Virus record (IMG/VR): IMGVR_UViG_3300043425_001539
Span: 62,001 to 126,000 of that record
Length of the DNA: 64,000 nt
Strand: one strand, 5' to 3'
Position numbers and translations under genes: made by a program
Notes under the pieces: model-generated
Databases searched by the model: none
What the model was told of the DNA's origin: nothing
Seen by the model: only the letters and a program-made list of their open reading frames with translations
Shown: positions 31,799-63,931 of the stretch, in pieces
How the letters are laid out: every line of letters starts with the position of its first letter
Position numbering within the stretch: the stretch's first letter is position 1

Positions 31799-31807
31799 CT
31801 ATATATC
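31799..31807 (-). promoter_or_regulatory. Candidate late-promoter motif GATATATAG
   Basis: Intergenic, 24 nt upstream of the ATG at 31774. Confidence 0.6.
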
Positions 31808-34800: not shown

Positions 34801-37800
34801 AGTTATCCCATGTAGATGTTATTTCATTAAAACCTTCAAAAGAAAATTGATATGAACCAAATGATGGCATTTTTTTAATTCCACCAGGATCTGACGGATC
34901 AATGATTTGAGGTAAAAGAACATAATTTTCATCCGAAGATAACTCTAAATATTCATTTTCACCAATTGATTCATTCAAAAAATATCTAAAAGTTTCAAGA
35001 ATAGGTGAATATGAATAATCTGATAAAAAGAAGTCAAAATCAAATTCTTTAATAGGAAACATCGAAAATAAACCTATTGTAGGTCTATACATTTCATATG
35101 CCACTATTCTTTTTTCATCCGATAGATAAAATTCTTGTGATGCGTCATTTATCTCTATTATAGAATAAGTGTTTTTTTCATTAAATGCACTTATTAAATT
35201 TTTATTATCAAATATAGGCTCGTCTAAATACGGTAATGAATAAACGTATTTTCCTTGAACGTTCCAAGGTAATAAACGTGAATACTGACTTTTTGCTGTT
35301 TGGAACCATTGTTGCAAAAATAATTCATTATTTAATATAGAAAGGTTCCCAAATGATAAATTAAAGTTTCCAGTTTCTGTTGCTGTATTATTTATTGTTA
35401 CAGACTTCGTATTTTGATTAATTTGTAAAACATAGCTATTTACAGGTATGCCTGTTCCTGAAACTGCTCCTCCTACATATATTCCTTCTGTTGTACTAAC
35501 ATTAATTATATTGCTACCAAGTGAAATTCCTGTTAAAATTTCACTTTTATTGTTTTGAAAATATCTTTCCCCATCCAATTTTGCAATTCTTGCTCTAGAC
35601 CTCCTTCTTTGTGCACCTCCAATAAATAATTGCGAAGCATTGGTGTCAACTGTTAATTTAATAACAAAATTTTGATACGAGCCTAAAGAAATGTTACTCG
35701 TATCTATTGAAAACGGAATTGTGGTATCGGAAAAATTACTATTAGTTGTAAAGAAAGAATAGTAAGTACCTGTATTTTGTATTGTGCTGACATTAAGAGC
35801 ATTAACATCTGATCTTATAATTATATTTGCTCCTGATGAAGTTTTTAATATTTTAACAAAATAAAAAGTATCGCCTGCAATGTTAGGATTATTAACAATA
35901 TTTAATCCTATACTTTCATTAGACGTTAATCCAGCATAAGATACTGTGGAAATATTAGTTGCTACTTTTACGTTTCCATTTTCATAAAAACCTAAATTAT
36001 TTATATAGCTTTTTCCGCTAATCATATGCCTTTTAAACTCTATGGTATTGCCATCTAATGGTTTAAGTTTAGATTTTAAAATTATTTTATTGTCTTCAGC
36101 TAATGCATATGCAGGTGAATTATCAAATGAATTTATACAATTAGATATTGCTTTTGCAATGTCATTAACATTTCCATCATTGCTGAAGTTTGATATCCAA
36201 TCATATCCGTTTGGATCTTGTACAGGAAATGCCCAAGATTTACCTTTTTGCAATCCCGTAGGATTTGCAAACATTTTCCATCTAAACTGTTTAAACTGTT
36301 CCTTTATTATTACGTTAAGTCCTGATGATCCATTTAAAACTGATAATGTGTATTTAGGGTATTCTATTATAATTTCGTAAGAATCCAATAAAGCATAATT
36401 TGAGCTATTTCCTGAATATCCTTGTTCTAAATCTAAAGATATGTTTGTATCAATATCCAATTTATAGCTTAAAGCAGTGTATGCATACGTTGCAATTCCA
36501 GTAGGATAAGAACCTACTAACGCATTTGCATTAATGGTTGTTCCTTGTGCAGAATTTTCAGGATTACCTAAATTTTTAATTTCAGCTGATGTAGAAGAAA
36601 TTAAATTAACTATTTTATAAAAACCTCCTGATACAATAAAAATTGTTTCATTTTCAACTAAATCTTGTGTGCTATCAAATGAAGCTGTTACGTTTTCACC
36701 AACATTTGGTTGAACAAACGAAGATGATAATGAAGTTACAGATTGATCTTGGAAAAAAGTAAATGAAGTTGCCGTTCCTCCTACAGCAGAAACTTGAAAA
36801 TAATATTGTGAATTTTTGTCTGTGTTATTATAATTCTTAACATTTATTTCTAAACATTCGTCATCAGCAATTATACTTCCATTATTTCCTTGATCTATCA
36901 GATTAATAATCAATTGTGACTGTCCTTCGTTTAGCAACAAGGCATCATTTTGTGAGATCATTTGTATAGGTCCTCCATATTTACTGATGTCTTCTTGTGT
37001 GTCAAAGAGTTTGACTTGTGTTACTCTTTTATAATCGGTAGTCCCAGTAAAACCGTAATCAACTTCAGACAAAGAAATTGCTCTTTTAAAAACATCATCT
37101 CTATCTTTAATATAAAAGATCCTTAAAGGATCATCAACCATTGCAGGTAAAGGAAACTTTCCTATTACATTTCCTTGATAAAAAGGAATTGATGATGTAT
37201 TGTTATTAAAAGAAGTGTTATGGTAATATTCAATAGGTAATTGTATTCCGTTTGGATTAGATTGAACAAAACTTCTTGTTGAATATGGCTCACCGTCAAC
37301 ACCAGGTTTTGGTGGTGGAGACTGATTAGGTATTTTTCCTAACACTGACGAAGCTAATTCAAATTCAGCTAATTGAATTTCAGATACATATAATCCAAAA
37401 TATCTATTAATTGAATAAATATTTGCCTCAGGATCATCAAATAAAAATTCTAAATTAATTAAATTTGTGCTAATTATGCCATTTCGTTCAAATCCGTTGG
37501 TGATAAAATTTTCAAATTCTTTAATCGGTTTATCCGTTGTCCAAAAATCATTTAACAATTCTCCTTTTCCAGCAATAGTTCCGCTTTTATAAACTATACC
37601 ATTCCATACAGTTGAAGCGTCTTCATCAAAACTTACTTCGATAGGACGTTCGATAAATCTTGGATCATTAACAATTTTTCTAATGTATTTACCTAATTTA
37701 GAGGTATCTCGCATATCAAATGTTTTAATTATACGAGCATCTTTAAATACATCTTTAAACAAATCATCAACGCTACCTTCATTATACGTTACTAAAGATA

Positions 37801-39293: not shown

Positions 39294-42200
39294 TTATACA
39301 TTTGAGCGGAAAAGCGATTGAACACTTTCTTTTGTAAATGATATGTTTTCGACCACTTGTGCCACTTCAGGAACTGATTGTGCATCAACAAGAGCAATGC
39401 TGTCTTTTTTGTATGTTGAAGTCACTTGAACATCAAACGAAAATACAGGTTCATCTTGCTGGTAAATGTCAATACCTATTTTCTTAGTGTATGATAAATT
39501 TCGCAATGTTCCAACCCTTTGAGGATCATATCCTCCAAGTATTCCTAAACCGCCAGCAATTACACTTGTAACTGTTGAAGATATCCAAGGTCCAAAATAA
39601 TCAGTCATTCTGTATTGAAACACAATCGGAACAACTATTGCATTATCTGACCCAGGCTGAACGCTCTTATATGATCTTGCATCAACTCCATTAACCAACA
39701 ATTGATTAAATTGTGCAGGTCCTACAAAAAGATATGCTCCTACTGTTTGTGAACCTATTAAATATCTATCGTTATCAATAAATCCAAATTTGTTAGGCAA
39801 TTCATCAACAGATGATGGTGTGTAGGTTGATGGGAAAGGCGCTGATCCTGTTATATTAAGATTATTATCTTTGTAGCTAAGCTGTAAAGGCAAATATGAT
39901 GATAATCTTGCTGGTGCAGGTTCGTTAAAATAATTTGAATGTATAAACTCTGAAACAATCTCAGGCGCCTGCGGTAAACCAGTATTTGTGTTTAGATTAA
40001 CAGTAGGTAATTGGAGATTACTCATTGCTACTGTTGTGCCAACATTGTTAATAGCAGGATGCTGAATATGTACACAAAAATTTGTTAAATACCCATTTCC
40101 TGCTGCAGTATTTCCAGGAGTTACAGGAGAAACAACGTCCCACACCCACGGAGCGGTTGTTCCAAAAATACCCGATGCGGTTGTTCCAGGAATAGCAGTA
40201 ATTCCCGTGTCACCAAGATCGGGAATGAAACTTCTTGTTGCTGTTTGTCCATAAATAGGATTAGTTAAACCTACATCGGTATATCTACTATATAAAAATT
40301 GACCTAATAATTGTCCACTTTGATAAAATGAAGCAGATAATGTATTATCATTATTTGTATCTGTTGTATTTATACCTAAATTAACAATAGGAACATAATC
40401 ATATTTTCTATAATTATTATAATCTTGATCATTTACAGTAAATGATCCTCCTGTTGCTCCTGTTCCGCTGTAAGGAACCATTTGCCCAAATCCTCCTGGG
40501 AATCTTGATATTAATTTAAGAGGAGAAGCACTATCATTTTGCAGATATAAATAATATGTTTTAGTTAATATTGCGCCTCTTTGCTGCGCTGTTGGCAAAG
40601 AAGCAACTTGGTCTGCATAATATCCTGCAAATAAATTAACAGTAGAACCGTTTTGTACAGGTAATTTAGTATTGCTTTGATCATCAACCAAAAATATAGA
40701 TATTGGAGTAACCACTTCGTTTAAGCGATTTTCAAGATCTTGTATACGCAACTGCATTTCCTGTAACTTTTGATACAAAGATATAACGTTGCCGTCGGGT
40801 GTATAAAAATTTGAAGCAATTACATCCGCACTGTGAGCAAAATATTGTTCATTTGCTGTAAAAGAGGATGATAGGTGTTGATCCAAACCTTGTGCAGCTA
40901 AATCAGATTCAATGTCAACTTTTACCTTTTCTTGTGCCGCCTGCTGTAATGCAATTGTAGCTTCGTCTTCGGTAACCAAATCATTAGGAAATTCAAACGA
41001 TATTGTATTTGACGGCGAAGACAGAATTGGATTATTTGGCCATCCTGCCTCAGACACAGACACTACATAAAATTCAACTTTTTCTCCTTTAGATATAGGA
41101 ATATCTATTTGATTAATATTGATAACATCAGGATTAGTTATATCCTCATTTGCCCAAACGTATTTTCCTGTATTGCCATCATATATTTTTTTACGAACCG
41201 GTGATTTATACTCGTTTAAAGCTGAAAATGATGCTCTTTGTTTTGATCCATTAGGATCGGTATAATCGAATTGCTTAATATCAGTTGCACTGCCGTCAGG
41301 CCTAACATATCTATAATAAGTTATAAATTGAATTACATTCTGCGCACCTGTTTTTTGACTGATAACAGGATTTGGTATTTGAAAAAATCCACGTAATCTA
41401 TATTTAGGCGTATCTAATGCAGCTGGTGCATTTTGTGCAGCAGAATTTAGATCAGCAACAATGGACGCATATAAAGATGATTGTGAAGTTTTTTGCTTAA
41501 TTGCTCTGTCTAACTTATTTATATCAGACTTTCTTTCATTCTCATTTGCATATTTTTTGGAATTAATTTTAGATTTTAGAAAATCAATCGATTTTTCCAA
41601 TTCATTAATTGTTTGCTGAACTTGTATTTTATCAGATTGTTTTTTTCTGATTGCTTCAATTTCTGCTTGATCTAACTTATGATCATTTATTTGAACAACT
41701 TGAAAATTATTAATGTCAAGCACAGGAGCATTTGGAACTAATCCATCAAACGTAGAAATTGATCCATCTCTTGCGCTTGTTAATAAATAATTACCAAAAT
41801 CTAAAACAGAAGACTGATAAAAATCTTTGAGATTTGTGGTTCCAGTTGTTAATGAAATGTTTAAATCATTTGTAAAAAATCCAATGCCTGGTGACCAAGT
41901 TGTTGATAATAAATTTGCTTCATCGTTAATTGTTCTAAAAAATACAACAGTGTACTCATTATATCCTATCCCAACATTAATTAATTTAGGCGAAAATGTT
42001 TCTGAATAAAATTGAACATTTTCGCCAATAACTATCGGTTCGTATCCGCTTATTCTTGTCACTCTCACGTATCTTGTTGAGCTATCAATTTCAGCTATTT
42101 CATAAATAGTTTCGCCTTTAATTAATTTATCGCCGACCTTTAAAGTCATAGAATCTACAGATAATGATAAATTATCAGTATAAGTTAATTTATCAAACAG

Positions 42201-42911
42201 ATAAAATCTTTTTGTTGAAGTGGTGCCATCGGAATTAGTGTATGTTCTATCTTCATAATTAACAGGCAAAAAAGATCCTGTATAACGAACAACTGATAAC
42301 GGCAAATCATTTACGCCTTCATCTAAAAAATATGTTATACCTTGTTTTTGTAAGTCAACCAATAAGTTAACATAATTTATATTATTTTTTCCTTGGATGT
42401 TATTTTGAAAATACTCAAGTTGTGTTTGATTGCTAATGTTTAGAATCATCCTTTTCACAAACACCTTGGATTCTTCTTGCGGAATATAACGTGTTACATC
42501 AAAACTTACTTTTAACGCAGGACTCATCAGGTTTTCAAAAAACCAATTATTCTCTGAAATAAAAGTTGATGGAACAGCAACTTCTCCGATTGGAGAAGGA
42601 TTAACAGGAGTTTTTGCTTGATAGATTTTTTTATAAGTGCCATCAGGTTGTCTTATAAAAGCATCACTGCCGTCAAACCCCAACATTTTTGATATCGTGT
42701 TGTCAATCCTGTCTATGCTGGATTTAAGATATCCAAAAGAAGGTATTGAGTACGTTGATGTTGTTCCGTCATTTTCTTTGACCGAAATTTGAACTGTTTC
42801 AGAAACAGAAACAGTTGCTTGTTGCAACTGTTGCAATGTTTCTAATGAATTATTTTGCAGTCTAACAAAATCAGCAAGAACTGAGGATAAACTATTATTT
42901 GTGTCAGCCAT
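39294..42911 (-). CDS. Large virion structural protein with coiled-coil segments
   Basis: 1205 aa; heptads at IQVQQTINELEKSIDFLKSKI and LYQKLQEMQLRIQDLENRL. Confidence 0.6.
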   Translation of the reverse strand: MADTNNSLSSVLADFVRLQNNSLETLQQLQQATVSVSETVQISVKENDGTTSTYSIPSFGYLKSSIDRIDNTISKMLGFDGSDAFIRQPDGTYKKIYQAKTPVNPSPIGEVAVPSTFISENNWFFENLMSPALKVSFDVTRYIPQEESKVFVKRMILNISNQTQLEYFQNNIQGKNNINYVNLLVDLQKQGITYFLDEGVNDLPLSVVRYTGSFLPVNYEDRTYTNSDGTTSTKRFYLFDKLTYTDNLSLSVDSMTLKVGDKLIKGETIYEIAEIDSSTRYVRVTRISGYEPIVIGENVQFYSETFSPKLINVGIGYNEYTVVFFRTINDEANLLSTTWSPGIGFFTNDLNISLTTGTTNLKDFYQSSVLDFGNYLLTSARDGSISTFDGLVPNAPVLDINNFQVVQINDHKLDQAEIEAIRKKQSDKIQVQQTINELEKSIDFLKSKINSKKYANENERKSDINKLDRAIKQKTSQSSLYASIVADLNSAAQNAPAALDTPKYRLRGFFQIPNPVISQKTGAQNVIQFITYYRYVRPDGSATDIKQFDYTDPNGSKQRASFSALNEYKSPVRKKIYDGNTGKYVWANEDITNPDVININQIDIPISKGEKVEFYVVSVSEAGWPNNPILSSPSNTISFEFPNDLVTEDEATIALQQAAQEKVKVDIESDLAAQGLDQHLSSSFTANEQYFAHSADVIASNFYTPDGNVISLYQKLQEMQLRIQDLENRLNEVVTPISIFLVDDQSNTKLPVQNGSTVNLFAGYYADQVASLPTAQQRGAILTKTYYLYLQNDSASPLKLISRFPGGFGQMVPYSGTGATGGSFTVNDQDYNNYRKYDYVPIVNLGINTTDTNNDNTLSASFYQSGQLLGQFLYSRYTDVGLTNPIYGQTATRSFIPDLGDTGITAIPGTTASGIFGTTAPWVWDVVSPVTPGNTAAGNGYLTNFCVHIQHPAINNVGTTVAMSNLQLPTVNLNTNTGLPQAPEIVSEFIHSNYFNEPAPARLSSYLPLQLSYKDNNLNITGSAPFPSTYTPSSVDELPNKFGFIDNDRYLIGSQTVGAYLFVGPAQFNQLLVNGVDARSYKSVQPGSDNAIVVPIVFQYRMTDYFGPWISSTVTSVIAGGLGILGGYDPQRVGTLRNLSYTKKIGIDIYQQDEPVFSFDVQVTSTYKKDSIALVDAQSVPEVAQVVENISFTKESVQSLFRSNV

Positions 42912-45962: not shown

Positions 45963-46014
45963 AATGTATTTTTTCTGCCTTTTTTCTATATATCAAAGGC
46001 AGAAAAAATACATT
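45963..46014. repeat. Perfect 20-bp inverted repeat with a 12-nt loop
   Basis: aatgtattttttctgccttt (45963-45982) and aaaggcagaaaaaatacatt (45995-46014) are exact reverse complements. Confidence 0.95.
45986..45994 (-). promoter_or_regulatory. Candidate late-promoter motif GATATATAG in the hairpin loop
   Basis: 27 nt upstream of the ATG at 45958. Confidence 0.65.
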
Positions 46015-50312: not shown

Positions 50313-51665
50313 TTATTCTATTTTGATATATGTTTCAGGTGTCCATTCAGAATAAATTTTATCATTAAGATTAAAAATGCTACATACCGACCAAAAATAT
50401 TCTCCATCAGATAATGTACCCGAAGGTATAACATATATATCTTCATTTGAATACATTTTAATTTCCGTGTATGCTATTTTTCTGTAATTATTGCCACCTG
50501 ACAAAACATTAACGCCTGAGTGAACAATAATATTTTTATCTATAATAGAATCTGCAAATGAAGAAGAAAATGTAAAATCTGCGCCGTTAAATTGCGCTAA
50601 TGTTATTTCCCAATTTCTATTTCCTAAATCAGTTTTTGATTTAATAAAAAGATCCTTTGATATATTTTCAACATAAGAGGAAATTTCAGGCACAAATGTA
50701 TGATTTTTAGCCTGTATTCTTAAAATTCCTGATGTATAATCAGCATAATAAATTCGATACAAATCTTTTTGCAATGATCCATCATTTCCAAGCAAGCAAG
50801 ATACGTTTGCGCCTGTTCCAGTGCCTACAACATTTACAAGTGGATTAACTGAATAGCTGCTCCCTGCATTTTCAATTTTTACCGTGGTAATTTTTCTTTC
50901 ATATGCGCCTGTGGTACCTATAAAAGGTTTTAAAAGAATATCATTATTTCCATTTGCTCTTGTCCCAGTTACGTCAAAATAATTAATATTACCGCCGTCA
51001 GAAACATTTTTTTCTCTAACTCTTAAATTATACTTAAATACATTATTTGTAGGATCTTCCCATCTAAAATATATTCCATCGTTTCTTATGGTTGATAATA
51101 AATTAATAGGATACTCTTTAATTTTTTCATTTGTTATGTCTGTATAAATTTTTCTTTTCCAAACAAAATTATCATTTATTTCCATTAATAAAGGATCCCC
51201 GTCATTAATATTACATAATAAATTATATTCATATGTATATATGTCGGCAAAAGGACCGCTGACTGCCACATCCAATATATCTATGACGGCACCTTTTATA
51301 TAGCTATGATTATCATTTATTGAAGTTACAGTAAAAAAATCTCCTTTTTTAATTAAATTTGACCCATACAATCCTGGAGTGTTTGCGGTGGGCGCTTCTT
51401 TTACTGTGTATTCAACTACAATTTCATATACAAAACCTACATTAGTTTGAGTTCTTCTTGAATTAAATGAAAGAATCGGAGAAGAATATTCAGTATCATA
51501 ATAATCATTATCTATACTTTCAGAAGTATAGATATACCCTTGATTTAATGCATTAGAAGGCGTATTACCATCTTCTATTGGAGGTACCGATATAAATCTG
51601 TTCAAATCATTTGTTGATAAAAAAACAGATTTTTCTTTAATTTGTCTGCGATCCAAAGTTTTCAT
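50313..51665 (-). CDS. Virion structural protein
   Basis: 450 aa, beta-rich; the ENAGSSYSVNPLVNVVGTGTGA motif is shared with the adjacent baseplate protein. Confidence 0.55.
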   Translation of the reverse strand: MKTLDRRQIKEKSVFLSTNDLNRFISVPPIEDGNTPSNALNQGYIYTSESIDNDYYDTEYSSPILSFNSRRTQTNVGFVYEIVVEYTVKEAPTANTPGLYGSNLIKKGDFFTVTSINDNHSYIKGAVIDILDVAVSGPFADIYTYEYNLLCNINDGDPLLMEINDNFVWKRKIYTDITNEKIKEYPINLLSTIRNDGIYFRWEDPTNNVFKYNLRVREKNVSDGGNINYFDVTGTRANGNNDILLKPFIGTTGAYERKITTVKIENAGSSYSVNPLVNVVGTGTGANVSCLLGNDGSLQKDLYRIYYADYTSGILRIQAKNHTFVPEISSYVENISKDLFIKSKTDLGNRNWEITLAQFNGADFTFSSSFADSIIDKNIIVHSGVNVLSGGNNYRKIAYTEIKMYSNEDIYVIPSGTLSDGEYFWSVCSIFNLNDKIYSEWTPETYIKIE

Positions 51666-54600
51666 CTATTTCAATAAAAGTATTCTTTTTAATTGTTGCA
51701 GAATTTCCGTTTGTGTCCTCTATTAAAAGTTCAACTCCAAATATTCCTGGGTAAGTAAATGTCCACATTATTTTCGAATCAGATGTTTCTACTAAAGTTT
51801 CTTCATTTTCTTTAATCTTCCATAAATATTTAGATTTACCTGATATTTTAGAAGTATCTGATGTAAATAATATAGAAACACCTATTGGAAATTTTCCATT
51901 TTTATTGTTGGCCCAAGTTTCCTCCCATGTTAATGCTCCGCCGATTGATCTTTCATAAGGTAATCTTTGTGAATCAGATTCAGCCAGGCTAGAATTACTA
52001 AAATAAGGCGATGATATGTATGAATATGTAGAAGGTAAATCACTTGCTGGGTACCAACCTTTATATCCAAAAGGACTTAATCCTTCAAATAAATATGTTT
52101 GAATGTTTCTGTAATTTATAACAAAATCATTTAACCCAGTCAAAAAACTTCCTACTTTATTTTCACCAAATCCCAGCCAAGAATAATAATTGCCAACAGG
52201 AAACGAGTGGGATAGCGAAGAAATATTACCATCGGGTGCTTCAAATGTTAACCCACCTTCACCTGTAAGATACCCTAAACAGTCTACGCTTGGTGTTTTT
52301 GCCTGCGCAATTATTTTAAAGTTGGCAGCAATATCACCGGATAAAACCTGTGTTGAAATAACTCCAGTATTCCATTCAGCATAAAAGGATAAAGAATTTC
52401 CACTTCCGGTGAAAGGAGAAGATAAAGTTATTTCACGAATAACACCTTGCTGTACAAAAATATTTGTAACTGTTGCAGGCGCTGTTGGGTACAATGGCAA
52501 GTAGTCTGATGTCAGAATATCACCAGGAGCTATCTGATTTTCTAATAGACCTGCAACATTTTTAATTTTATAGTCACCTACTATACAGTCACCTATAAAA
52601 GTAGCTTTCTTTTTGATATCTTTATCTAATGTTACAGTAGTTCCTGTAATTCCCAATACGGTTGAAACTTTTTCAAAAGGTTCGCCATATATTACATCTC
52701 CCACATTAATAGCTGAAGAAGTAAAAAATGAATTGGGATCAGAATAAGTGTTAATGTTTATAAAGATTGGAGATACATATTGTTCTGATATTGGATAATA
52801 ATAAAATTTGTTTAATCCTTGAGATGTTAAGTTATTTAATTCATAAAGAGCTTGAGCATAAATTTGCGCCGTACTCATTCCTCCTACAATTCCAGTAAAA
52901 TTATAAGTATCGTCTTCATTAAAAGTTAATCCACTATTTTGTACCAAATCATTAATGATAAAATTACACCAATATGAATTTGAAAAGTCTAATGTATTCC
53001 AAGATAATGCACAAGATTCTTGCCAAATTACATCTTTGTAATTTTGCCATGTAATAATATTAGAACCTAATTTTCTTTCAGCGCTATCTTCATCAAAATT
53101 TCTTTGACACACCTGAAATGAAGAAGAAATTTTAAGTAAATCATTTTCTTGATCAGATACAGATAAAATTGTGCCTACACCATTTTTCCAATTACCTATT
53201 TGTGTAACTTGCAAAGAAAAATCTCCGTACAAAATTCCGTTATCAAAGTACCAATTTGTATGATTAGCTATTGCGGTAGAATCAAATTCAGATGAAGGCG
53301 CATTATTAAAATCTCCTGACGAAGGATACATATTAAAATCAAAATAAATATTTGCAGCACCTCCTACATTTTCTCCATAGTAAATTCTTGTAGGAAATTC
53401 TTGATATTCGTATTCTAAATAAACATTTTCAATTCCTTCTGCTGCTAAATTAATTAAATAAGAATTTAATTCATCAATAGGTCCACCGTTTATTCCTGCA
53501 ATATCTATTACATATATTTCAGATTCAGACCAAATATCATAAATGGATCCAACATTACTTGTGTCCAAGTAAACGTGCGTTGTTCTAAAATCTTGCGTGT
53601 ATTTTAGTTCATTATCTAAATATGCATACAGTTTAATTTGCGTAAATCCTGGCCGTATTTCATCAAGAGGATTACATGTGACGGCGGATTTTTTAATATA
53701 AATTTTACCTAAATGATCACGCTTTTCAGGGATATTTGAATTTACTGATTCAATTACCCAAGCAGAAGATGAAATTATAGGATTCCAATTCAAATCACCA
53801 TTCAAAGGTTCACCGTCTCTAACTTTATAGATTTTTCCAATTTCTCCTTTTTTAAGTAAAGATAAATCATTGCCTTCTCCATTAAGTATTATATTTGAAG
53901 GTTGTCCGCTATACGTATTTTTTCCATTAATAGGTATACGTTTTCTTATTGGCGAATTGTTTCTTTGTACCGCTTTTATAAACTTTCCTACACTTATGCC
54001 TGATGGATTAGTATCTTCATTGTAAATTTTATTTCCGTTTAAGGTAATAGTTCCACCTATTTCACGCAAAACTTCCCATGTTGCAGGAGAAGCCTTAAAA
54101 GCTTCAGGCGGTTCAGAAAAAAGCTCAATATATGTATATTCAGGATTTGAATAATCCGAACCTAATACATTAAGTTGATACACAGTTTCATCTCTTCTTA
54201 TAAATATCCATTCGTCATCAGGATTATATAACGGGTCTATCGGCGGATAAAGTCTTTGCCCTTGAACAATAATTGTAGGATTAACCGCTGGCGGATTTGT
54301 GGTAGAATCTTGATACCCAATAACAGGTCCTTCTAAATTATCTTCAGGCGATATTTCAACAATCGGAAATTCTTCACAATAAGGAAAGCTATAATTATTA
54401 ATATCAGAAATATCTGAAATATCAAGATTATCCCATCTAAAATCAAAAGATTCCCAAATAGAATTATTAAATATGGGATTTATCCATCTACCGGTAGAAT
54501 TATCCCAATTAAAATCTATGTATCTATTATTTTCAATTTCTTGCTGCGTTTGATTTTGCTGTGTATTAGGTAATTGCTTTAATGAATCCCATGTATTAAC

Positions 54601-57600
54601 ACAGCCATTTAAAAATTTTGCAATATAAGAAAAATCAGACTCTGCCATATAAACTTCTATGCAGTTCTTTTTTATTAAATTTGCAAAATTATTATCTGTA
54701 TTATAAACAATTAATTCAACCGTGTATTTTCCAACATAAGGAAGAACGACTGTGTGATCTATAAGTAAATCTATGGGTTGAACTCCGCTATCATAATTAA
54801 ATTGATTTGTTGGTTTTTCAGGTTCTGATAAAACCACTTTCCATTGCATTTGATAAAATTCGCCTCTTCCTAAATCATTCCATGTAAATATTGATCTAGT
54901 GTGTCCACTATTCACATTAACTTCTGGCGTGGATATGTATCCTGTACCTGCATTAGTAACTTCCACTCCTTGATGGACAAAGATTTTATCACCAGATTGA
55001 ACAGTTGTTGATGCTGGCGTTAAATCATAATTTTCTACCGTAATGGTTGATGTTCCAAGACCTACTGTTACATTTGATGTTAGTACAATATTTGATATAT
55101 TGTCTCCTGTAACAAGTCTGTTAGAAGTAACATTAAATGACCCTGCGGGCGCAATTTCAGGGCTAACGTTAAAAACATTATTTGTGCCACCTCCTGTTGA
55201 ACCAACAGAAACAACAGTATATTCAAGTAAATTAAGTTGTCCTTTTCTTAAAGAAGCTGATAATGTAGCATTTGCGCCTTCTTGACTTACAACCTTTAAT
55301 GTTGGTGTAAATTTATATTCGGTGCCTGGATTAATAATTTCAGCGGCTATAACTTCACCTGTTCCGTTTGGAAGAGGATCTACGTGAACAATAACATTGG
55401 CATTTGTACTTCCTCCTAATTCATACCAAGTATATGGAACTTCATCCCAAGTAATCGGAAATTCAGTTGACAAAGAAGCAACAGCTCCTACAGGTATATT
55501 AGGTGCATCATTCCACGCGGGAGTTCTAGTTCCGTTATTAATATTTCCTACTGGGGTGCCGTCATAAATTTTTAAATTTAATTCTGTAACCGTACCTAAA
55601 TTAGGTGTAAAATTTGCAACTGGGTATGTTGAGTACCCTAATCCTTTATTTAAAAACCAAACATCTTCAACTTCAAATCCTAAATCTGACGGTGCTGCAG
55701 TAAATCCTGATCTATTTACAACTTCATATTGTGTTCCAACAGGAGAAACTACCAAAGATTGGCCAAAAGCTTGAGGAAACGAAGAATATCCTGAACCTTG
55801 TAAAGACCCTTCTTGAATTATTACATCAGTTACCACACCCAATCCTGTAACACCTGATACTATCAATCTTAACGGAGATTCATATGTTCCGCCATTAAGA
55901 GTTATTATATCCCCCACAATAAAATCTGTACCAGCAGGATTTGCTAATGAATATGATCCAGTATACCCTTTCATTTTAACATATCCTGTTGCTTGTTGAT
56001 TTGAAGTTCCTGGAAATGTTACATTAGGTATACTTGTATATGGGCCGCCTGGCGAAGTTATTGAAATATCTAAAATATCATACCTATTCATAAAAGACTG
56101 TAAAGTCTTTTCTAAAGTAGGACTTAAATATGCATCTGATGTATATGGACGTAAATCCTGAATAATTGCTCTGTCTTCACATGTAAAATTAATAGGGCGC
56201 GTTAATTCTAAAACTCTTCGTTCATCAACATTTCGCCAAGAATTAATTGCATATCTTTCATAATAAACGCCTTCACCTGTTATATCAGTTATTTGACTGT
56301 TAAGAGGCAGAAATTTTTCTTTAAGATATTTTTTAAGAGCAAAGAATTTAATTAAGGCTTCCTCATTTGTAAATTCAAATGCATCAGTTGTTATAGGTAT
56401 GCCATTTTCATCAAAATTCCCTGAATCTTTAACCAAATCATAAAAAAGCCCAAACATACTGGTTTTTTTATAGTGCTTGCTTGGAACTAAATTTAATGAT
56501 TCTCCACTTTGTTTTTTGTCTTTTAACTGAAAAGCAATAGGTACTTGTCTATACGTTCCAAATTCGGTATCTAAGCTATTTACATTTAAAAAGTATTCTT
56601 TAAGTCTGATATCATAATAACCAAACCAATTTATAATATTAACCAATCCTTTATATGATCCAACGTAAGGCCAGATTTGATCTCCTTGTAGGAGCATTTC
56701 ACGTCTTTTTTGGTTTAATAAAATATAGTCAACATTAGATTCATCTACATCTGAATCTCTAAGTATTAATTCCTGTTCAAGATCAACATCTCTACCTATA
56801 TTTGATAATAATATTCCTAGTCTTTCATCTTCAGCTTCAGTTTCAGCTCTATAAACTCCGTACATTAATAATCCAGGATTTGATGCAAATGTTATATCAA
56901 GAATCCTAAAAATCGTTATAAATACTCCTTCTACATTTGACTGATGTCCTATGTTTATCGTTAAAGGAGTTTTTTGAATATTTTCATAAACTGTTCTTTG
57001 ATATAACTGATTATTTGCAGGTCCTCCAATTGGCGACGACGGTATGGTGTCGGATGATGCAGCTTGTGTAAATTCAAATTCCAATGAAGCCGATTTGGTA
57101 ATTGTAGGATAATCTTCATTGTAATTTACATCAAATAAAAAGAAAGAATCATCGCCTTCTACATAAGCTTTAAATTTAGGAACTACTTGATATGTTATTC
57201 CCGCACCCGGTGTAGTGCCAACGGTTAAAGACGTATCAAAATATAAGTTAAAAGTATCAACTTTAGTTAAAACATACGGCCCTCCATCAAGAGCACCTCC
57301 GTCTATAAATATTTTTGATCCAGCCTGTAAATCATGTGGAAAATATGCAGTAAAATTTATTTCTCCTAAAGATGTACCGGGTATTGGATTAGTTAAAGTA
57401 ATTGATTGTGAACTTGTGTTAATATCAAAAATAAAAGTGTTTTCAGGTATGCCTGTACCACTAATATTCATTCCTACAACAAGATTTGCAATTGTAGCTG
57501 CTGGTATTCTTGCAACAACATTTGCATCATACTCTCTAACAAGTCCCGTAAAGGTAAATGATTCAATTTCAATTTTAGCACTACTGCCGTTTGCTGAAAA

Positions 57601-58101
57601 AGAATTTATATTAAACGGTCCATAATTTTCAATTCTTGGAAATGTATATGTACTTTTTCCATTGGAATCAAAAATATTTTCCAATATGTAAATTTGGTCA
57701 ACTGATATTAAGTCAGTAGATACACGTTCTAAACTATAATCTATTATGTAATCTGTCGACGGAGTAGGAAAATCATTATTATTAATTGAGTTGGGAATAA
57801 TGATTGATTGAAAAGAACCGTTAGAATCAAAAGTTATATTAGAATTTGGTATAGTGAAAACAATATTGTCATTATCTATACTTCTTATTTCAATATAAGT
57901 ATTAGGCCCGTAATTTGTTCCTCCATCTAAAATTTCAATGTATATTACCTGGCCGCTAAAATTTGTATATGCATTAATAATTGCACCTATCCCAGGAAAT
58001 TGGGCATCATCAATTATTGAGACATATGTGGCATATCTCTTTTGAGGGTTTAAATTATCACCTTTTTTATTAAAAAACGCAAATCTATTAGTTAATAACA
58101 T
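51637..58101 (-). CDS. Large baseplate wedge protein (gp7-like) with PKD-like domains
   Basis: 2154 aa; YVGSYKGLVNIINWFGY wedge-type motif; C-terminal WTFTYPGIFGVELLIEDTNGN; downstream of gp25/gp6 homologues. Confidence 0.65.
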   Translation of the reverse strand: MLLTNRFAFFNKKGDNLNPQKRYATYVSIIDDAQFPGIGAIINAYTNFSGQVIYIEILDGGTNYGPNTYIEIRSIDNDNIVFTIPNSNITFDSNGSFQSIIIPNSINNNDFPTPSTDYIIDYSLERVSTDLISVDQIYILENIFDSNGKSTYTFPRIENYGPFNINSFSANGSSAKIEIESFTFTGLVREYDANVVARIPAATIANLVVGMNISGTGIPENTFIFDINTSSQSITLTNPIPGTSLGEINFTAYFPHDLQAGSKIFIDGGALDGGPYVLTKVDTFNLYFDTSLTVGTTPGAGITYQVVPKFKAYVEGDDSFFLFDVNYNEDYPTITKSASLEFEFTQAASSDTIPSSPIGGPANNQLYQRTVYENIQKTPLTINIGHQSNVEGVFITIFRILDITFASNPGLLMYGVYRAETEAEDERLGILLSNIGRDVDLEQELILRDSDVDESNVDYILLNQKRREMLLQGDQIWPYVGSYKGLVNIINWFGYYDIRLKEYFLNVNSLDTEFGTYRQVPIAFQLKDKKQSGESLNLVPSKHYKKTSMFGLFYDLVKDSGNFDENGIPITTDAFEFTNEEALIKFFALKKYLKEKFLPLNSQITDITGEGVYYERYAINSWRNVDERRVLELTRPINFTCEDRAIIQDLRPYTSDAYLSPTLEKTLQSFMNRYDILDISITSPGGPYTSIPNVTFPGTSNQQATGYVKMKGYTGSYSLANPAGTDFIVGDIITLNGGTYESPLRLIVSGVTGLGVVTDVIIQEGSLQGSGYSSFPQAFGQSLVVSPVGTQYEVVNRSGFTAAPSDLGFEVEDVWFLNKGLGYSTYPVANFTPNLGTVTELNLKIYDGTPVGNINNGTRTPAWNDAPNIPVGAVASLSTEFPITWDEVPYTWYELGGSTNANVIVHVDPLPNGTGEVIAAEIINPGTEYKFTPTLKVVSQEGANATLSASLRKGQLNLLEYTVVSVGSTGGGTNNVFNVSPEIAPAGSFNVTSNRLVTGDNISNIVLTSNVTVGLGTSTITVENYDLTPASTTVQSGDKIFVHQGVEVTNAGTGYISTPEVNVNSGHTRSIFTWNDLGRGEFYQMQWKVVLSEPEKPTNQFNYDSGVQPIDLLIDHTVVLPYVGKYTVELIVYNTDNNFANLIKKNCIEVYMAESDFSYIAKFLNGCVNTWDSLKQLPNTQQNQTQQEIENNRYIDFNWDNSTGRWINPIFNNSIWESFDFRWDNLDISDISDINNYSFPYCEEFPIVEISPEDNLEGPVIGYQDSTTNPPAVNPTIIVQGQRLYPPIDPLYNPDDEWIFIRRDETVYQLNVLGSDYSNPEYTYIELFSEPPEAFKASPATWEVLREIGGTITLNGNKIYNEDTNPSGISVGKFIKAVQRNNSPIRKRIPINGKNTYSGQPSNIILNGEGNDLSLLKKGEIGKIYKVRDGEPLNGDLNWNPIISSSAWVIESVNSNIPEKRDHLGKIYIKKSAVTCNPLDEIRPGFTQIKLYAYLDNELKYTQDFRTTHVYLDTSNVGSIYDIWSESEIYVIDIAGINGGPIDELNSYLINLAAEGIENVYLEYEYQEFPTRIYYGENVGGAANIYFDFNMYPSSGDFNNAPSSEFDSTAIANHTNWYFDNGILYGDFSLQVTQIGNWKNGVGTILSVSDQENDLLKISSSFQVCQRNFDEDSAERKLGSNIITWQNYKDVIWQESCALSWNTLDFSNSYWCNFIINDLVQNSGLTFNEDDTYNFTGIVGGMSTAQIYAQALYELNNLTSQGLNKFYYYPISEQYVSPIFININTYSDPNSFFTSSAINVGDVIYGEPFEKVSTVLGITGTTVTLDKDIKKKATFIGDCIVGDYKIKNVAGLLENQIAPGDILTSDYLPLYPTAPATVTNIFVQQGVIREITLSSPFTGSGNSLSFYAEWNTGVISTQVLSGDIAANFKIIAQAKTPSVDCLGYLTGEGGLTFEAPDGNISSLSHSFPVGNYYSWLGFGENKVGSFLTGLNDFVINYRNIQTYLFEGLSPFGYKGWYPASDLPSTYSYISSPYFSNSSLAESDSQRLPYERSIGGALTWEETWANNKNGKFPIGVSILFTSDTSKISGKSKYLWKIKENEETLVETSDSKIMWTFTYPGIFGVELLIEDTNGNSATIKKNTFIEIDENFGSQTN

Positions 58102-61284: not shown

Positions 61285-62688
61285 TTATTTGTTTTTCTTT
61301 TTATCGGCATTTTTTGCACCTTTATTTGGATCTTTATAGCTGCCGGGAGATTCAGCAGGTTCAATAAGTTCAACAATTAAAGTTTCTTTTGAAATATTTG
61401 CAAGCTTTCCTATTTCTCCGTTTCTAATGACTCCGCCTACAACTTTACAATTAATAGGAAATCTTTTGTTTTCAATAAAGCAATCTTCGCAAGAATTTGA
61501 AATATGTAAAGGCGATTCAGCAACTTTACAAGAAATGAAACTATTTTCTTTGACTGGTTTGCATTCAGCAACTCTTGAATTTTTAATTTCACACCCATAA
61601 AATGTACATCTGTTAAAAACACCTTCCAATTCACAATTAACAAATTCAATATCATGCGCTACACAATTTTTAATTTTTGTGTCCTTTACTTGTAAAACCG
61701 ATAAATCTGTATCAAAATTAAATATGCCTTTAGTAATACCACTAGACAACAATAACTTAAATAGAGGTTCTTTAATTACATGCCAATATGATTCCAATAT
61801 CTGATCATCATTTCGCATATCTATTCCTACCTCTATTTTAGGAAAGTTTTTCTTGAACGTAGAATATTTAACAAACCCTTCATAAAGTTTGGTTTGTTTT
61901 TCCATTAACTTTTTAAAATAGGCACGGTCACTTTGGCTGAAATTGCCATCAAAATTTAATACTTCATATAAATTTAATATGTAATAATTTATAAGATCTA
62001 AAATTTTACGAGTTTTTCTTTCATAATCAGCCCCGCCCATATAACGGTATTCAAGATAACCTTTTTCAGCTTTTAAGAAATTCACCCCATAATATTTTTC
62101 TGACGGAACTTTAAGAACATTTTTGCTAATATCAGTTTCCGTCGTATAAAATAATATTGCATTGGGGTGAATTTCTTTGATGCTTCTTGCATAAACTGAA
62201 TCCCTTCTTTTTGGGAATATATCATAAACTTTTTCTTCATCAAATCCCAAAATGAATTTTACAATATTCATTTGCGGAATTTCAACTCTTGTTGGAATCT
62301 TATTTGGGTCTATACTGATGTTTGCGTGAATTGAACATCTTTCATTTGTGTATCCGTTTGACTGAATCCATTCAAATACTTTAATGATAACGTTTCTTGC
62401 TTCTGAATAATTTAAAGGCCCAGTAACCAATTCACACATTTTTTTGCCGCCTGAATAATCAGGCTCCAACTTAAAAACAGATGATGATGGCTGTACTGGC
62501 GAGTGATACAAAGGCTTAGGTTCTTGAATATTACTTAATGCCATTGGAACTACCACTCTTTTTTTCAGAAATGCAGAAAGAGAACGTGCTGTTTCAATAA
62601 TATCCATTGATGAATAAAATTCAAATTCCACCCCGATCCTGCTACCTGCAAGAATTTCATCTTCAGTATAAACCTTTTTGGTTTTCAT
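61285..62688 (-). CDS. Amidoligase (COOH-NH2 ligase type) with C-terminal beta-helix-like repeats
   Basis: IGVEFEF, EPD, CELVTGP, CSIHANIS, KYYGVNF, LEYRYMGG; C-terminal Cys-rich short repeats. Confidence 0.78.
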   Translation of the reverse strand: MKTKKVYTEDEILAGSRIGVEFEFYSSMDIIETARSLSAFLKKRVVVPMALSNIQEPKPLYHSPVQPSSSVFKLEPDYSGGKKMCELVTGPLNYSEARNVIIKVFEWIQSNGYTNERCSIHANISIDPNKIPTRVEIPQMNIVKFILGFDEEKVYDIFPKRRDSVYARSIKEIHPNAILFYTTETDISKNVLKVPSEKYYGVNFLKAEKGYLEYRYMGGADYERKTRKILDLINYYILNLYEVLNFDGNFSQSDRAYFKKLMEKQTKLYEGFVKYSTFKKNFPKIEVGIDMRNDDQILESYWHVIKEPLFKLLLSSGITKGIFNFDTDLSVLQVKDTKIKNCVAHDIEFVNCELEGVFNRCTFYGCEIKNSRVAECKPVKENSFISCKVAESPLHISNSCEDCFIENKRFPINCKVVGGVIRNGEIGKLANISKETLIVELIEPAESPGSYKDPNKGAKNADKKKNK

Positions 62689-62703: not shown

Positions 62704-63900
62704 TTATGCTTCATTTGGTATAGTCAAGTAGATTTTATCATTAATCACTTTATCTACTGTAACCATAATTTTTTCACCAACGTTATATTTCTTTTTCTTA
62801 GTCTTGACTTCTTTTTGAGATATCATTCCTATAATATCTTTTTGCAATTTAACTAATACTCCAAAAGATTGAATTGAAATAATTTCCCCTGTTTTAACGG
62901 TTCCCAAATTAGCATTTTTAAATTCTGTAATTTCTTTTAATCTAATTGCAGGATCTTCGTCAGTCAATATAATTTTTTTGTCATTGGTCACCTCTTTAAT
63001 CCAAAAAGAAATTTTATCACCTGGCCTAACTCGCCCTTCTTTAAATTTCTCTTTTAATTCGGGTGTCATTTTACTTGCGTGTATAAGTCCAGTAAATATA
63101 TCGTCAAACTCAATAAATATGCCATATTTTGCCGCACCTGTAATTGTTCCAGAATATTTCTTTTCTCTATCTAATTCATCAATTTTTTGCGGCAATATTT
63201 TAGAAATGTATTTTTTATATGAAAAAACAAATGTTGAACTTTCTTCTAAATAATCTTCAACCATAACTGGTACCTCTTTGCCTATCATTTCATCAAAATC
63301 TCTAACAATATTTGCTGCAGCAAGCGAACCTGGCAAAAAACCATCTACTCCTTGAACGTTAATAATAAATCCGCCATGATTTTTTCCAATTATTTTTCCA
63401 TAATAAGCGGTTTCATTTGCGGATATTTGTTCCATAAATTCATTCCGCGTCTTTTCGGTTTGCCCTGCATATAATGATGCTCGAGTATACGGATTAATAC
63501 CTTCAATTTTTACATGATAACCTTGATTTAAAAAAGATCTTTTCCAAGATTCATTTTTTGCATTTTCAATAAATTCTTCCTGCGTTAAACCAAGCATAGA
63601 GAAAAACTTACGTTCGCTATCCAGCTTAATTGTTGCGTCGATCATTCCTTCTAATGTAATTGCCATCTCTTTTTCGGAAACTCCGTAGATGTCAACCATT
63701 TTCATAATCATACCTTCATTAATTTCTTTACTGACTACATCAGATGCTACCATTAATTTACATAACTCTTCGGCATAAGGCTCGTGACAAAAAACTTTTC
63801 CTCCATATTTTTTGGATAGTTTTTTGTTTACAACTCGTCTTTCTGTAAGACTTAAAATTTCCCAATCAAATGCTGGGGACTGTTTTTTTTCTAAATTCAT
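62704..63900 (-). CDS. rpsA: Phage-encoded ribosomal protein S1 homologue (three clear plus one degenerate S1 domains)
   Basis: GKIIGKNHGGFIINVQGVDGFLPGS, GTITGAAKYGIFIEFDDIFTGLIHASKM, GEIISIQSFGVLVKL...GMI. Confidence 0.85.
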   Translation of the reverse strand: MNLEKKQSPAFDWEILSLTERRVVNKKLSKKYGGKVFCHEPYAEELCKLMVASDVVSKEINEGMIMKMVDIYGVSEKEMAITLEGMIDATIKLDSERKFFSMLGLTQEEFIENAKNESWKRSFLNQGYHVKIEGINPYTRASLYAGQTEKTRNEFMEQISANETAYYGKIIGKNHGGFIINVQGVDGFLPGSLAAANIVRDFDEMIGKEVPVMVEDYLEESSTFVFSYKKYISKILPQKIDELDREKKYSGTITGAAKYGIFIEFDDIFTGLIHASKMTPELKEKFKEGRVRPGDKISFWIKEVTNDKKIILTDEDPAIRLKEITEFKNANLGTVKTGEIISIQSFGVLVKLQKDIIGMISQKEVKTKKKKYNVGEKIMVTVDKVINDKIYLTIPNEA

Positions 63901-63922
63901 ATTTTTTTAATTGGTCTATAAG

Positions 63923-63931
63923 TTATATATC
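63923..63931 (-). promoter_or_regulatory. Candidate promoter motif GATATATAA
   Basis: 22 nt upstream of the S1 ATG. Confidence 0.55.

What the first reader, a model, noticed from the sequence alone, without database searches (positions are those of the whole stretch)
62704..63931. Shortened phage S1 ribosomal protein in a genome without Shine-Dalgarno leaders
Seen: about four S1 domains instead of six plus a novel N-extension, preceded by the putative late promoter; leaders throughout the window are A-runs without GGAGG where I checked. Known: S1 recruits A/U-rich leaders, Bacteroidota largely lack SD, and S1 homologues have been reported in huge phages. Inference: replacement of host S1 to bias ribosomes towards A-rich late phage mRNAs.
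Basis: partly seen in the sequence, partly recalled or inferred. Interest (0 to 1): 0.6.

Follow-up and report, generated by a model that had tools for sequence, protein, structure and literature searches.

The report
Shortened S1-like protein of a jumbo phage
A 238-kb freshwater jumbo phage with no Shine-Dalgarno sites encodes a four-domain protein derived from ribosomal protein S1; such phage S1 genes have been reported before, and their role in translation is plausible but untested.

Summary
The gene is real: window 62704-63900, minus strand, 398 aa. Pfam finds three S1 domains. An AlphaFold2 model adds a fourth, diverged S1-like barrel (aa 63-142) behind a 60-residue N-terminal tail.

It derives from bS1 but is not an rpsA equivalog (84 bits against cut-offs of 368-918). 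Its second domain matches only bS1 domain 2 and keeps the two phenylalanines that hold mRNA at the ribosome's exit channel. The tail carries an FDW motif that resembles the FNW helix anchoring Flavobacterium johnsoniae bS1 to uS2/uS8. That resemblance is suggestive, not significant.

The genome-wide claims hold. GGAG occurs in 0.3% of leaders, and A reaches 55-62% at -16..-10. A strand-specific GATATATA motif lies 31 nt before the start codon: 23 intergenic copies against 0.6 expected.

The protein belongs to a large phage-only family of about 400 aa (at least 285 clusters, with relatives in Lak and other huge phages). In four relatives from jumbo and huge phage contigs the gene has the same neighbours, inside the baseplate gene block.

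Al-Shayeb et al. (2020) already linked possible phage rpS1 genes to SD-poor genomes. Ribosome binding, replacement of host S1 and preference for late phage mRNAs remain untested. This is a new member of a known kind, of moderate interest.

The parts
62704..63900 (-). S1-like gene, 398 aa (P0001), stop codon included
   Evidence: ORF list and translation. Pfam S1 74.5 bits. The start is supported by full-length alignment with 81 homologues.
63721..63900 (-). N-terminal tail, aa 1-60: short helices, FDW motif (aa 11-13, W13 invariant), conserved HEPYAEEL (aa 39-46)
   Evidence: AF2 models and alignments A1/A2. The motif resembles the F. johnsoniae bS1 helix FLANFNWHNF that contacts uS8/uS2 (PMC13000457). 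Tests are suggestive only.
63475..63714 (-). First OB barrel, aa 63-142: diverged S1-like fold with a helical insert (aa 93-125)
   Evidence: AF2 pLDDT about 90. Weak Foldseek hits are almost all S1-type OB folds. No sequence similarity to any E. coli S1 domain.
63220..63405 (-). Second OB barrel, aa 166-227: bS1 domain-2 type (GGF...GFLPGS)
   Evidence: Domain profile scores 37 bits to E. coli D2 and 8.5 or less to the other five domains, and 33.7 bits to Flavobacterium D2. F178 and F188 align with the E. coli F120/F130 mRNA pocket (PMC10123108). This is the most conserved part of the superfamily.
62962..63159 (-). Third OB barrel, aa 248-313: canonical RNA-binding S1 domain
   Evidence: Best Pfam stretch is aa 247-312. 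Scores 36 bits to E. coli D4 and 24 to D5. Y259, F262 and H274 are conserved.
62722..62898 (-). Fourth OB barrel, aa 335-393: S1 domain
   Evidence: PF00575 scores 32.5 bits, over its cut-off. AF2 model. Weakly D4/D5-like.
63924..63931 (-). GATATATA promoter-like motif, 31 nt before the ATG
   Evidence: 23 intergenic sense copies against 0.61 expected, strand-specific, at a fixed distance from start codons.
63901..63923 (-). SD-less, A-rich leader (ACTTATAGACCAATTAAAAAAAT)
   Evidence: Sequence. Leader statistics.
61285..62688 (-). Conserved downstream partner gene, 467 aa, 15 nt after the S1-like stop; probably co-transcribed
   Evidence: Adjacent in the window and in four relatives. Weak Amidoligase_2 and Pentapeptide_4 hits. 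No terminator-like site between the two genes.

Best explanation
The gene encodes a phage-specific, shortened derivative of ribosomal protein bS1. It has a short N-terminal tail, a diverged first OB domain, a bS1-type second OB domain and two RNA-binding S1 domains.

Shown: the domain structure, the bS1 ancestry, the large phage-only family, the SD-less A-rich leaders, and the position among baseplate genes behind a phage promoter-like motif.

Inferred: it is made together with virion proteins. It helps ribosomes of a Bacteroidota host start on the phage's A-rich, SD-less leaders, either docked at the bS1 site on the 30S platform or as a free mRNA-binding helper. Docking would use the FDW tail and the first two OB domains. 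The last two S1 domains would hold the A-tract at about -10 to -16. The simplest purpose is to add to a loosely bound, limiting host bS1 when demand for structural proteins peaks. A selective bias towards phage mRNAs is possible but has no support here.
For: bS1 ancestry:
- All top NCBIfam models are rpsA.
- Best PDB sequence hits are bS1, aligned in order with E. coli residues 66-241 and beyond.
- Foldseek's best hit is E. coli bS1 in a 30S mRNA delivery complex, E 4.7e-20 over 391 columns.
- Domain 2 is specific: 37 bits against 8.5 or less for the other domains.
- F178 and F188 match the OB2 mRNA pocket F120/F130 (PMC10123108). F188 is invariant and F178 is invariant in A1.

Anchor:
- W13 is invariant in the 82 sequences of A1.
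- 31 of 63 superfamily representatives carry F[DN]W..[FY], and 14 carry F[DN]W..[FY]E.G, the form of FNWHNFEEG in Flavobacterium bS1.
- That pattern is absent from 348,000 residues of background ORFs.
- That helix binds uS8/uS2 (PMC13000457).
- hhalign gives a same-order alignment with P 0.004.

Context:
- No SD, and A peaks at -16..-10 and -3. [quoted passage not shown]
- Bacteroidota-type promoters occur in the presumed early region.
- The family has at least 285 clusters at 90% identity with 50-99% identity over the full length, which indicates purifying selection.
- Al-Shayeb 2020 saw the same link between possible rpS1 and SD-poor genomes.
Against: - Scores are far below every rpsA equivalog cut-off.
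- The first OB domain has no sequence similarity to bS1 domain 1, which is the main uS2 anchor in E. coli.
- The N-terminal profile finds no bacterial bS1 among 1.84 billion proteins. By HMMER it scores real bS1 N-termini no better than shuffles. In this phage's own subfamily the motif is degenerate (FDWEIL).
- The family is no closer to Flavobacterium bS1 than to E. coli S1: 84-88 against 90.5 bits.
- The gene's position inside the baseplate block is stable across very distant phages. That is not what one expects of a translation factor.
- There is no expression evidence. The metatranscriptome run held only a 151-nt contig in the neighbouring gene.
Confidence: 0.55

Rival explanations
1. It is an RNA-binding protein that works off the ribosome. 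It could be an RNA chaperone, a protector or regulator of late phage mRNAs, or a cofactor of another phage enzyme, as host S1 is for T4 RegB and Q-beta replicase. It has kept S1 domains but lost ribosome docking.
For: - The first OB domain is unlike bS1 domain 1.
- The N-terminal module is family-specific.
- It fails all rpsA cut-offs.
- It is always paired with the 467-aa amidoligase/pentapeptide-like protein, which could be its partner.
- The Lak version has only two canonical S1 domains and lies in a replication-type context.
- Al-Shayeb 2020 left 'off the ribosome' open.
Against: - The best conserved part is the bS1 domain-2 type barrel, with the exit-channel phenylalanines.
- The FDW/FNW motif resembles the Bacteroidia anchor.
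- The published link with SD-less genomes points to initiation.
Confidence: 0.25
2. It is a virion-associated protein. It could be a baseplate or tail assembly component built from OB folds, or a cargo protein packed into the particle and delivered with the DNA.
For: The order hub / variable gene / S1-like / 467 aa / gp13-like / gp25-like / baseplate J-like is kept in contigs of 202, 317, 425 and 462 kb, down to 27-35% identity. The gene follows the same promoter-like motif as the head protease and a head-closure gene.
Against: - Canonical RNA-binding S1 signatures and the domain-2 pocket are conserved.
- No PHROG structural family matches.
- In Lak phages the homologue is not among tail genes.
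- Gene position alone is weak evidence.
Confidence: 0.1
3. It is a decaying fragment of a captured host rpsA gene with no function.
For: It is shorter than host bS1 (398 aa against about 590) and scores below the rpsA cut-offs.
Against: - The frame is intact.
- At least 285 clusters share one length and 50-99% identity, with many invariant residues.
- 106 diverse clusters share the N-terminal module.
- Near-identical copies occur in independent freshwater and subsurface studies.
Confidence: 0.02

Closest known systems
Bacterial ribosomal protein bS1 (rpsA), e.g. E. coli (557 aa, 6 OB domains) and Flavobacterium johnsoniae (591 aa)
   Same: - Tandem S1/OB domains on flexible linkers.
- The second domain is bS1 D2 type, with the F120/F130 equivalents.
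- The later domains are of the RNA-binding D3-D5 type.
- An aromatic N-terminal helix motif resembles FNW of Bacteroidia bS1.
- The expected substrate is A/U-rich, SD-less leaders.
   Different: - Four domains, not six.
- The first domain is unrecognisable by sequence and carries a helical insert.
- About 12 extra residues lie between the FDW helix and the second helix.
- Scores of 50-85 bits fall far below the curated cut-offs of 368-918.
- Found only on phage-like contigs.
'Possible rpS1' proteins of huge phages (Al-Shayeb et al. 2020, PMC7162821) and of Lak megaphages
   Same: Direct homologues: 27-37% identity to ORFs in LR756500-LR756504 and LR745206, and 31% to Lak phages, including the N-terminal module. 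The genomes lack SD sites. LR756500 has the same gene neighbourhood.
   Different: This genome is smaller (238 kb) and uses the standard code. Domain number varies: the Lak version has two canonical S1 domains plus an acidic tail, and the paper mentions proteins with up to six. No earlier domain-by-domain dissection or anchor comparison was found in the papers read.
Phage-encoded bS21 of freshwater Bacteroidota phages (Chen et al. 2022, PMC9723584)
   Same: A phage copy of a 30S platform protein involved in initiation. Freshwater huge phages of Bacteroidota. Expression is linked to late replication in that study.
   Different: A different protein. No bS21 gene was found in this record, which is 84% complete.
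Short S1 proteins of Bacillota (four domains) and of cyanobacteria and chloroplasts (three domains)
   Same: Similar length and a reduced number of domains. PRK06676 (391 positions) aligns over aa 145-389.
   Different: 74 bits against a cut-off of 368. The N-terminal module is unrelated.

Membership tests
bS1 / rpsA equivalog (TIGR00717, NF0049xx, NF005208) | Whole-protein score above the curated cut-off | tested here: not met
   Best is 84.5 bits against a cut-off of 524. TIGR00717 scores 81.7 against 577 and PRK06676 scores 74 against 368.
bS1 / rpsA | Four to six tandem S1/OB domains | tested here: met
   Three Pfam S1 stretches and four OB barrels in the AF2 model. Foldseek's top hit is full-length bS1, E 4.7e-20.
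bS1 / rpsA | Domain 2 signature (GGF..V..G..AFLPGS) with the OB2 mRNA-pocket phenylalanines | tested here: met
   The domain profile scores 37 bits to E. coli D2 and 8.5 or less to the other domains, and 33.7 bits to Flavobacterium D2. F178 and F188 are conserved.
bS1 / rpsA | Domain 1 that docks on uS2 (E. coli K43 loop, F79) | tested here: not met
   The profile of the first barrel scores 4.4 bits or less to every E. coli domain, and -0.9 to D1. Only the fold is S1-like.
bS1 / rpsA (Bacteroidia type) | N-terminal aromatic anchor helix (F. johnsoniae residues 11-20, FLANFNWHNF) bound to uS8/uS2 | tested here: inconclusive
   FDWEIL lies at aa 11-16 and W13 is invariant. 14 of 63 superfamily representatives carry F[DN]W..[FY]E.G, as in FNWHNFEEG. 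hhalign gives P 0.004 with probability 8.6%, and HMMER does no better than shuffles.
bS1 / rpsA | Physical association with the 30S subunit | not testable with these tools
   The complex prediction with B. thetaiotaomicron uS2 gave 'no answer', which is evidence neither way.
Huge-phage 'possible rpS1' group (Al-Shayeb 2020) | Multi-S1-domain ORF on a huge or jumbo phage genome that lacks SD sites, homologous to the LR7565xx ORFs | tested here: met
   tblastn gives E 2e-18 to 4e-26 to LR756500, LR756502 and LR756504 (weaker, 7e-17, to LR756501/LR756503), and 4e-39 to Lak. SD sites are absent. The genome is a single 238,475-bp viral contig.
Single-domain S1 regulators (CvfD/GSP13/YabR) | One S1 domain, about 120-140 aa | tested here: not met
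   Only domain-level hits of 33-49 bits against cut-offs of 117-183. The architecture has four domains.

The most novel reading that the evidence does not exclude
The S1-like protein and its constant 467-aa neighbour (amidoligase-like plus pentapeptide repeats) form a two-gene unit kept inside the baseplate block because the S1-like protein is packed into the virion and injected. It would then occupy the bS1 site of Bacteroidota ribosomes, through the FDW helix, from the first minutes of infection. That would be a delivered ribosome-reprogramming subunit rather than a late helper.
Probability: 0.07. Interest if true: 0.8.

Novelty: new member of a known kind. Interest (0 to 1): 0.4.

Why it matters
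How ribosomes of Bacteroidota pick start codons without Shine-Dalgarno pairing is still open. bS1 contacts with upstream adenines are the leading idea, but they have not been seen in structures (PMC13000457).

A compact, abundant, naturally minimised bS1 derivative from phages of such hosts could be a convenient tool for that question. It would show which domains suffice for docking and which for capturing A-tracts.

It would also test the long-standing but unproven claim that phage-encoded ribosomal proteins redirect host ribosomes.

As a genome finding alone it repeats a published observation.

Tried and rejected
- Complex prediction of aa 1-235 with Bacteroides thetaiotaomicron uS2 returned 'no answer' (score 0.00, controls not run). 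It counts neither for nor against binding.
- PHROGs gave no family for the protein.
- The ESM Atlas feature search of aa 1-165 gave only sub-threshold leads, 0.77 or less.
- PDB sequence searches with the N-terminal profile, and with a 75-aa N-terminus, found no S1.
- The genome-contig scan found no bacterial relative. Its only hit was a 425-kb contig filed as a Pacearchaeota MAG, which looks like a phage.
- 'Relatives' cannot be drawn for a virus record, so no host genomes could be searched directly. Flavobacterium-type bS1 genes were fetched instead, using a DNA pattern back-translated from the peptide quoted in PMC13000457.
- A global-mode hhalign run gave meaningless end-to-end alignments and was replaced by local mode.
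- Reads: the only metatranscriptome holder had a 151-nt contig in the neighbouring gene. A second 'RNA?' run is probably DNA. Expression is therefore undecided.
- The sigma-70 consensus scan was at chance level and no terminator was found near the gene.
- Host assignment from the S1 sequence failed. The family profile scores E. coli and Flavobacterium bS1 equally.
- TAG=Q was used only to list ORFs of the Lak-A1 locus. Lak phages are known to recode TAG (my own knowledge). The Lak S1-like ORF itself contains no recoded codon. The window is read with table 11 throughout.

Full report
**What is there**

The finding covers one ORF on the minus strand, window 62704-63900, with an ATG start and 398 aa. 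The window is part of a single viral contig of 238,475 bp. It has 32% G+C, is about 93% coding under the standard code, has 283 of 299 ORFs on one strand and 12 tRNA genes, and is rated 84% complete. Near-identical DNA occurs in freshwater, subsurface and wastewater metagenomes from eight studies. This is therefore a jumbo phage of freshwater habitats.

**Domain structure**

Pfam finds S1 (PF00575, 74.5 bits) in three stretches. An AlphaFold2 model built on 82 homologues (mean pLDDT 80.6) shows four five-stranded OB barrels, at aa 63-142, 166-227, 248-313 and 335-393. They follow a poorly ordered tail of 60 residues with three short helices.

Foldseek's best PDB match is full-length E. coli bS1 in a 30S mRNA delivery complex (E 4.7e-20, 391 columns). 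Other bS1 structures follow.

Modelled alone, the N-terminal 165 residues give only weak matches (E 5e-3 to 5e-2). Nearly all of them are S1-type OB folds, such as PNPase KH-S1, eIF2-alpha, Spt6 S1, YabR and GSP13.

**Is it bS1?**

The top eleven NCBIfam hits, and twelve of the first thirteen, are rpsA models. They score 44-85 bits against curated cut-offs of 368-918. The family profile aligns in order with E. coli S1 residues 66-241 and onward.

I built a profile for each phage domain and scored it against the six E. coli domains:
- The second phage domain is specifically domain 2: 37 bits, against 8.5 or less for the others. It scores 33.7 bits to Flavobacterium D2.
- The third is of the RNA-binding D4/D5/D3 type (36, 24 and 12 bits).
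- The fourth is weakly D4/D5-like.
- The first matches nothing.

In E. coli, OB2 sits at the mRNA exit channel, and K117, F120 and F130 form a pocket for mRNA (PMC10123108). From the alignment, F120 and F130 correspond to F178 and F188. F188 is invariant across the superfamily and F178 is invariant in A1, the closer family. The domain-2 barrel is the best conserved part of the whole superfamily.

The protein is thus derived from bS1 and keeps a bS1-specific functional domain. It is not an rpsA equivalog.

**The N-terminal tail**

The profile of residues 1-165 finds no PDB sequence. In a scan of 1.84 billion representative proteins it finds 106 clusters. All are 501 aa or shorter, with the match always at the N-terminus, and none is a bacterial bS1 of about 590 aa. 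Of 63 diverse members, 57 carry Pfam S1. Source names are automatic ('ribosomal protein S1', 'S1 RNA-binding domain-containing protein [Bacteroidales bacterium]'). The module is therefore family-specific and widespread, not peculiar to this phage.

One feature stands out. W13 is invariant, and the motif F/I-D/N-W-x-x-L/F/Y lies at residues 11-16. A 2026 cryo-EM study of F. johnsoniae 30S subunits placed bS1 residues 4-40 on uS2 and uS8. It identified a helix with the aromatic run FLANFNWHNF at positions 11-20 (PMC13000457).

I fetched Flavobacterium-type rpsA genes from metagenomes with a DNA pattern for that peptide. They begin MSEQ.KSQEEFLANFNWHNFEEGIDAVDEKNL.EFEELVSKTF. The comparison gave these results:
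- In the phage superfamily, 31 of 63 representatives have F[DN]W..[FY].
- 14 have F[DN]W..[FY]E.G, the exact form of FNWHNFEEG.
- The pattern occurs nowhere else in 348,000 residues of background ORFs.
- Only this gene, among 299 ORFs of the phage, has F[DN]W near its N-terminus.
- A local profile-profile alignment keeps the same order: FDW on FNW, then the second helix, then the first strand of OB1. Its P is 0.004 and its probability only 8.6%.
- HMMER scores real bS1 N-termini no better than shuffles.
- In this phage's own subfamily the motif is degenerate (FDWEIL).

I treat this as a suggestive lead that the tail is a retained or mimicked Bacteroidia-type anchor. It is not a demonstration.

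**Translation signals**

For 297 ORFs, GGAGG and AGGAG never occur at -18..-4. GGAG occurs in 0.3% of these windows, against 2.5% of coding windows. G falls to 4-10%. A rises to 55-62% at -16..-10 and 56% at -3, and T is 51% at -1.

This matches Bacteroidia, which ignore SD sequences and use adenines at -3, -6, -12 and -13. [quoted passage not shown]

A Bacteroidota host is also indicated by about ten copies of TTTGCCAGGTCGC.AAAAGTATGTATATTTG. This has the -33 TTTG and -7 TAnnTTTG elements and is confined to genome 207-229 kb, a region of small genes.

Leaders there are slightly less A-rich than in the structural region (0.48 against 0.54, p 0.015). That difference is too small to argue for a separate class of late leaders.

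**The promoter-like motif**

GATATATA occurs 32 times on the gene strand and twice on the other. Of these, 23 copies are intergenic, against 0.61 +/- 0.72 in dinucleotide shuffles, and most lie 28-36 nt before a start codon. One lies at window 63924-63931, 31 nt before this gene's ATG.

Genes behind the motif include a head maturation protease, a head-closure-like protein, glycosyltransferases, a homing endonuclease and many unknowns. That is compatible with a middle or late class, but 'late' is not shown. The sigma-70 consensus scan is at chance level, and there is no terminator between this gene and the next.

**Gene neighbourhood**

- Upstream lie a baseplate hub (Phage_base_V OB domain) and a 96-aa ORF.
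- Downstream lie a 467-aa ORF (15-nt gap), a T4 gp13-like protein, a gp25-like wedge protein, a baseplate J-like protein and a 2154-aa ORF.
- The same order is kept in contigs of 317 kb (57% identity, with a NUMOD3 endonuclease inserted), 202 kb, 425 kb (35%) and 462 kb (LR756500, 27%).
- In Lak megaphages the homologue (31% identity over aa 8-314, two canonical S1 domains and an acidic tail) lies next to replication-type genes instead.

The stable pairing with the 467-aa protein and the position within the baseplate block are unexplained. They are the basis of the rival readings. The 467-aa protein has weak Amidoligase_2 and Pentapeptide_4 hits.

**What is known already**

Al-Shayeb et al. 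(2020) listed S1 among the ribosomal proteins of huge phages. [quoted passage not shown] They cautioned that true rpS1 is hard to confirm (PMC7162821). Mizuno et al. (2019) set the S1 domain aside for the same reason. Chen et al. (2022) linked phage bS21 in freshwater Bacteroidota phages to late replication.

This analysis adds:
- the domain-by-domain assignment;
- the conserved OB2 pocket;
- the possible Bacteroidia-type anchor;
- the size and phage-only range of the family;
- the conserved placement in the baseplate block.

**Verdict**

The most likely function is help with translation initiation on A-rich leaders, at or near the bS1 site (confidence about 0.55). Rivals are an off-ribosome RNA-binding role (0.25), a virion-associated role (0.1) and a decaying captured host rpsA fragment (0.02).

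Novelty: a new member of a known kind. Interest: 0.4.

Noticed in passing
window 61285-62688 (-): A 467-aa protein with a weak Amidoligase_2 hit (aa 17-131), a Cys-rich pentapeptide-repeat region (aa 346-392) and a basic tail. It is always the next conserved gene after the S1-like gene in distant jumbo and huge phages. Its function is unknown and it may be a partner of the S1-like protein.
   Followed up: partly
genome 207,000-229,500 (outside the window; window = genome 62001-126000): About ten copies of TTTGCCAGGTCGC.AAAAGTATGTATATTTG. This is a Bacteroidota-type promoter (-33 TTTG, -7 TAnnTTTG), clustered in a region of small genes. It is probably the early region read by host RNA polymerase, and it is a clue to the host.
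   Followed up: partly
window-wide, e.g. 63924-63931, 31800-31807, 45987-45994 (-): GATATATA is a strand-specific intergenic motif lying 28-36 nt before start codons, with 23 intergenic copies against 0.6 expected. It precedes the head protease, a head-closure-like gene, glycosyltransferases and many unknowns. No phage sigma factor or RNA polymerase was looked for.
   Followed up: partly
L007 (JBBACR010000001.1, 425,361 bp): A contig filed as a 'Candidatus Pacearchaeota archaeon' MAG carries the phage block of baseplate hub, S1-like, 473-aa partner and gp13-like genes. It is probably a huge phage genome binned as an archaeon.
   Followed up: partly
L002 7226-7978: In the 317-kb relative, a 250-aa NUMOD3 (homing endonuclease-like) gene is inserted exactly between the S1-like gene and its 468-aa partner.
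   Followed up: no
L003 5893-7002 (Lak-A1): The Lak megaphage homologue keeps the N-terminal module (SFNWTPYEDGWNG) and two canonical S1 domains. It ends in an acidic tail and lies beside a DnaB-like helicase, not among tail genes.
   Followed up: partly
window 26054-31774, 31808-39280, 39294-42911, 51637-58101 (-): Four very large ORFs (1906, 2490, 1205 and 2154 aa). Of these only the 2154-aa ORF was scanned: no Pfam match, and PHROG matches only to families of unknown function. The other three were not scanned. I guess they are tail or fibre components.
   Followed up: no
genome 171,263-174,010 and scattered sites: Twelve tRNA genes, seven of them in one cluster: Gly, Trp, Gln, Lys, Thr, Pro and Met. 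No bS21 gene was found in the 84%-complete record.
   Followed up: partly
all start codons of the genome: The start context has T at -1 in 51% of genes and A at -3 in 56%. TTG accounts for 15% of the longest-ORF starts, though some of these may be miscalled starts.
   Followed up: no
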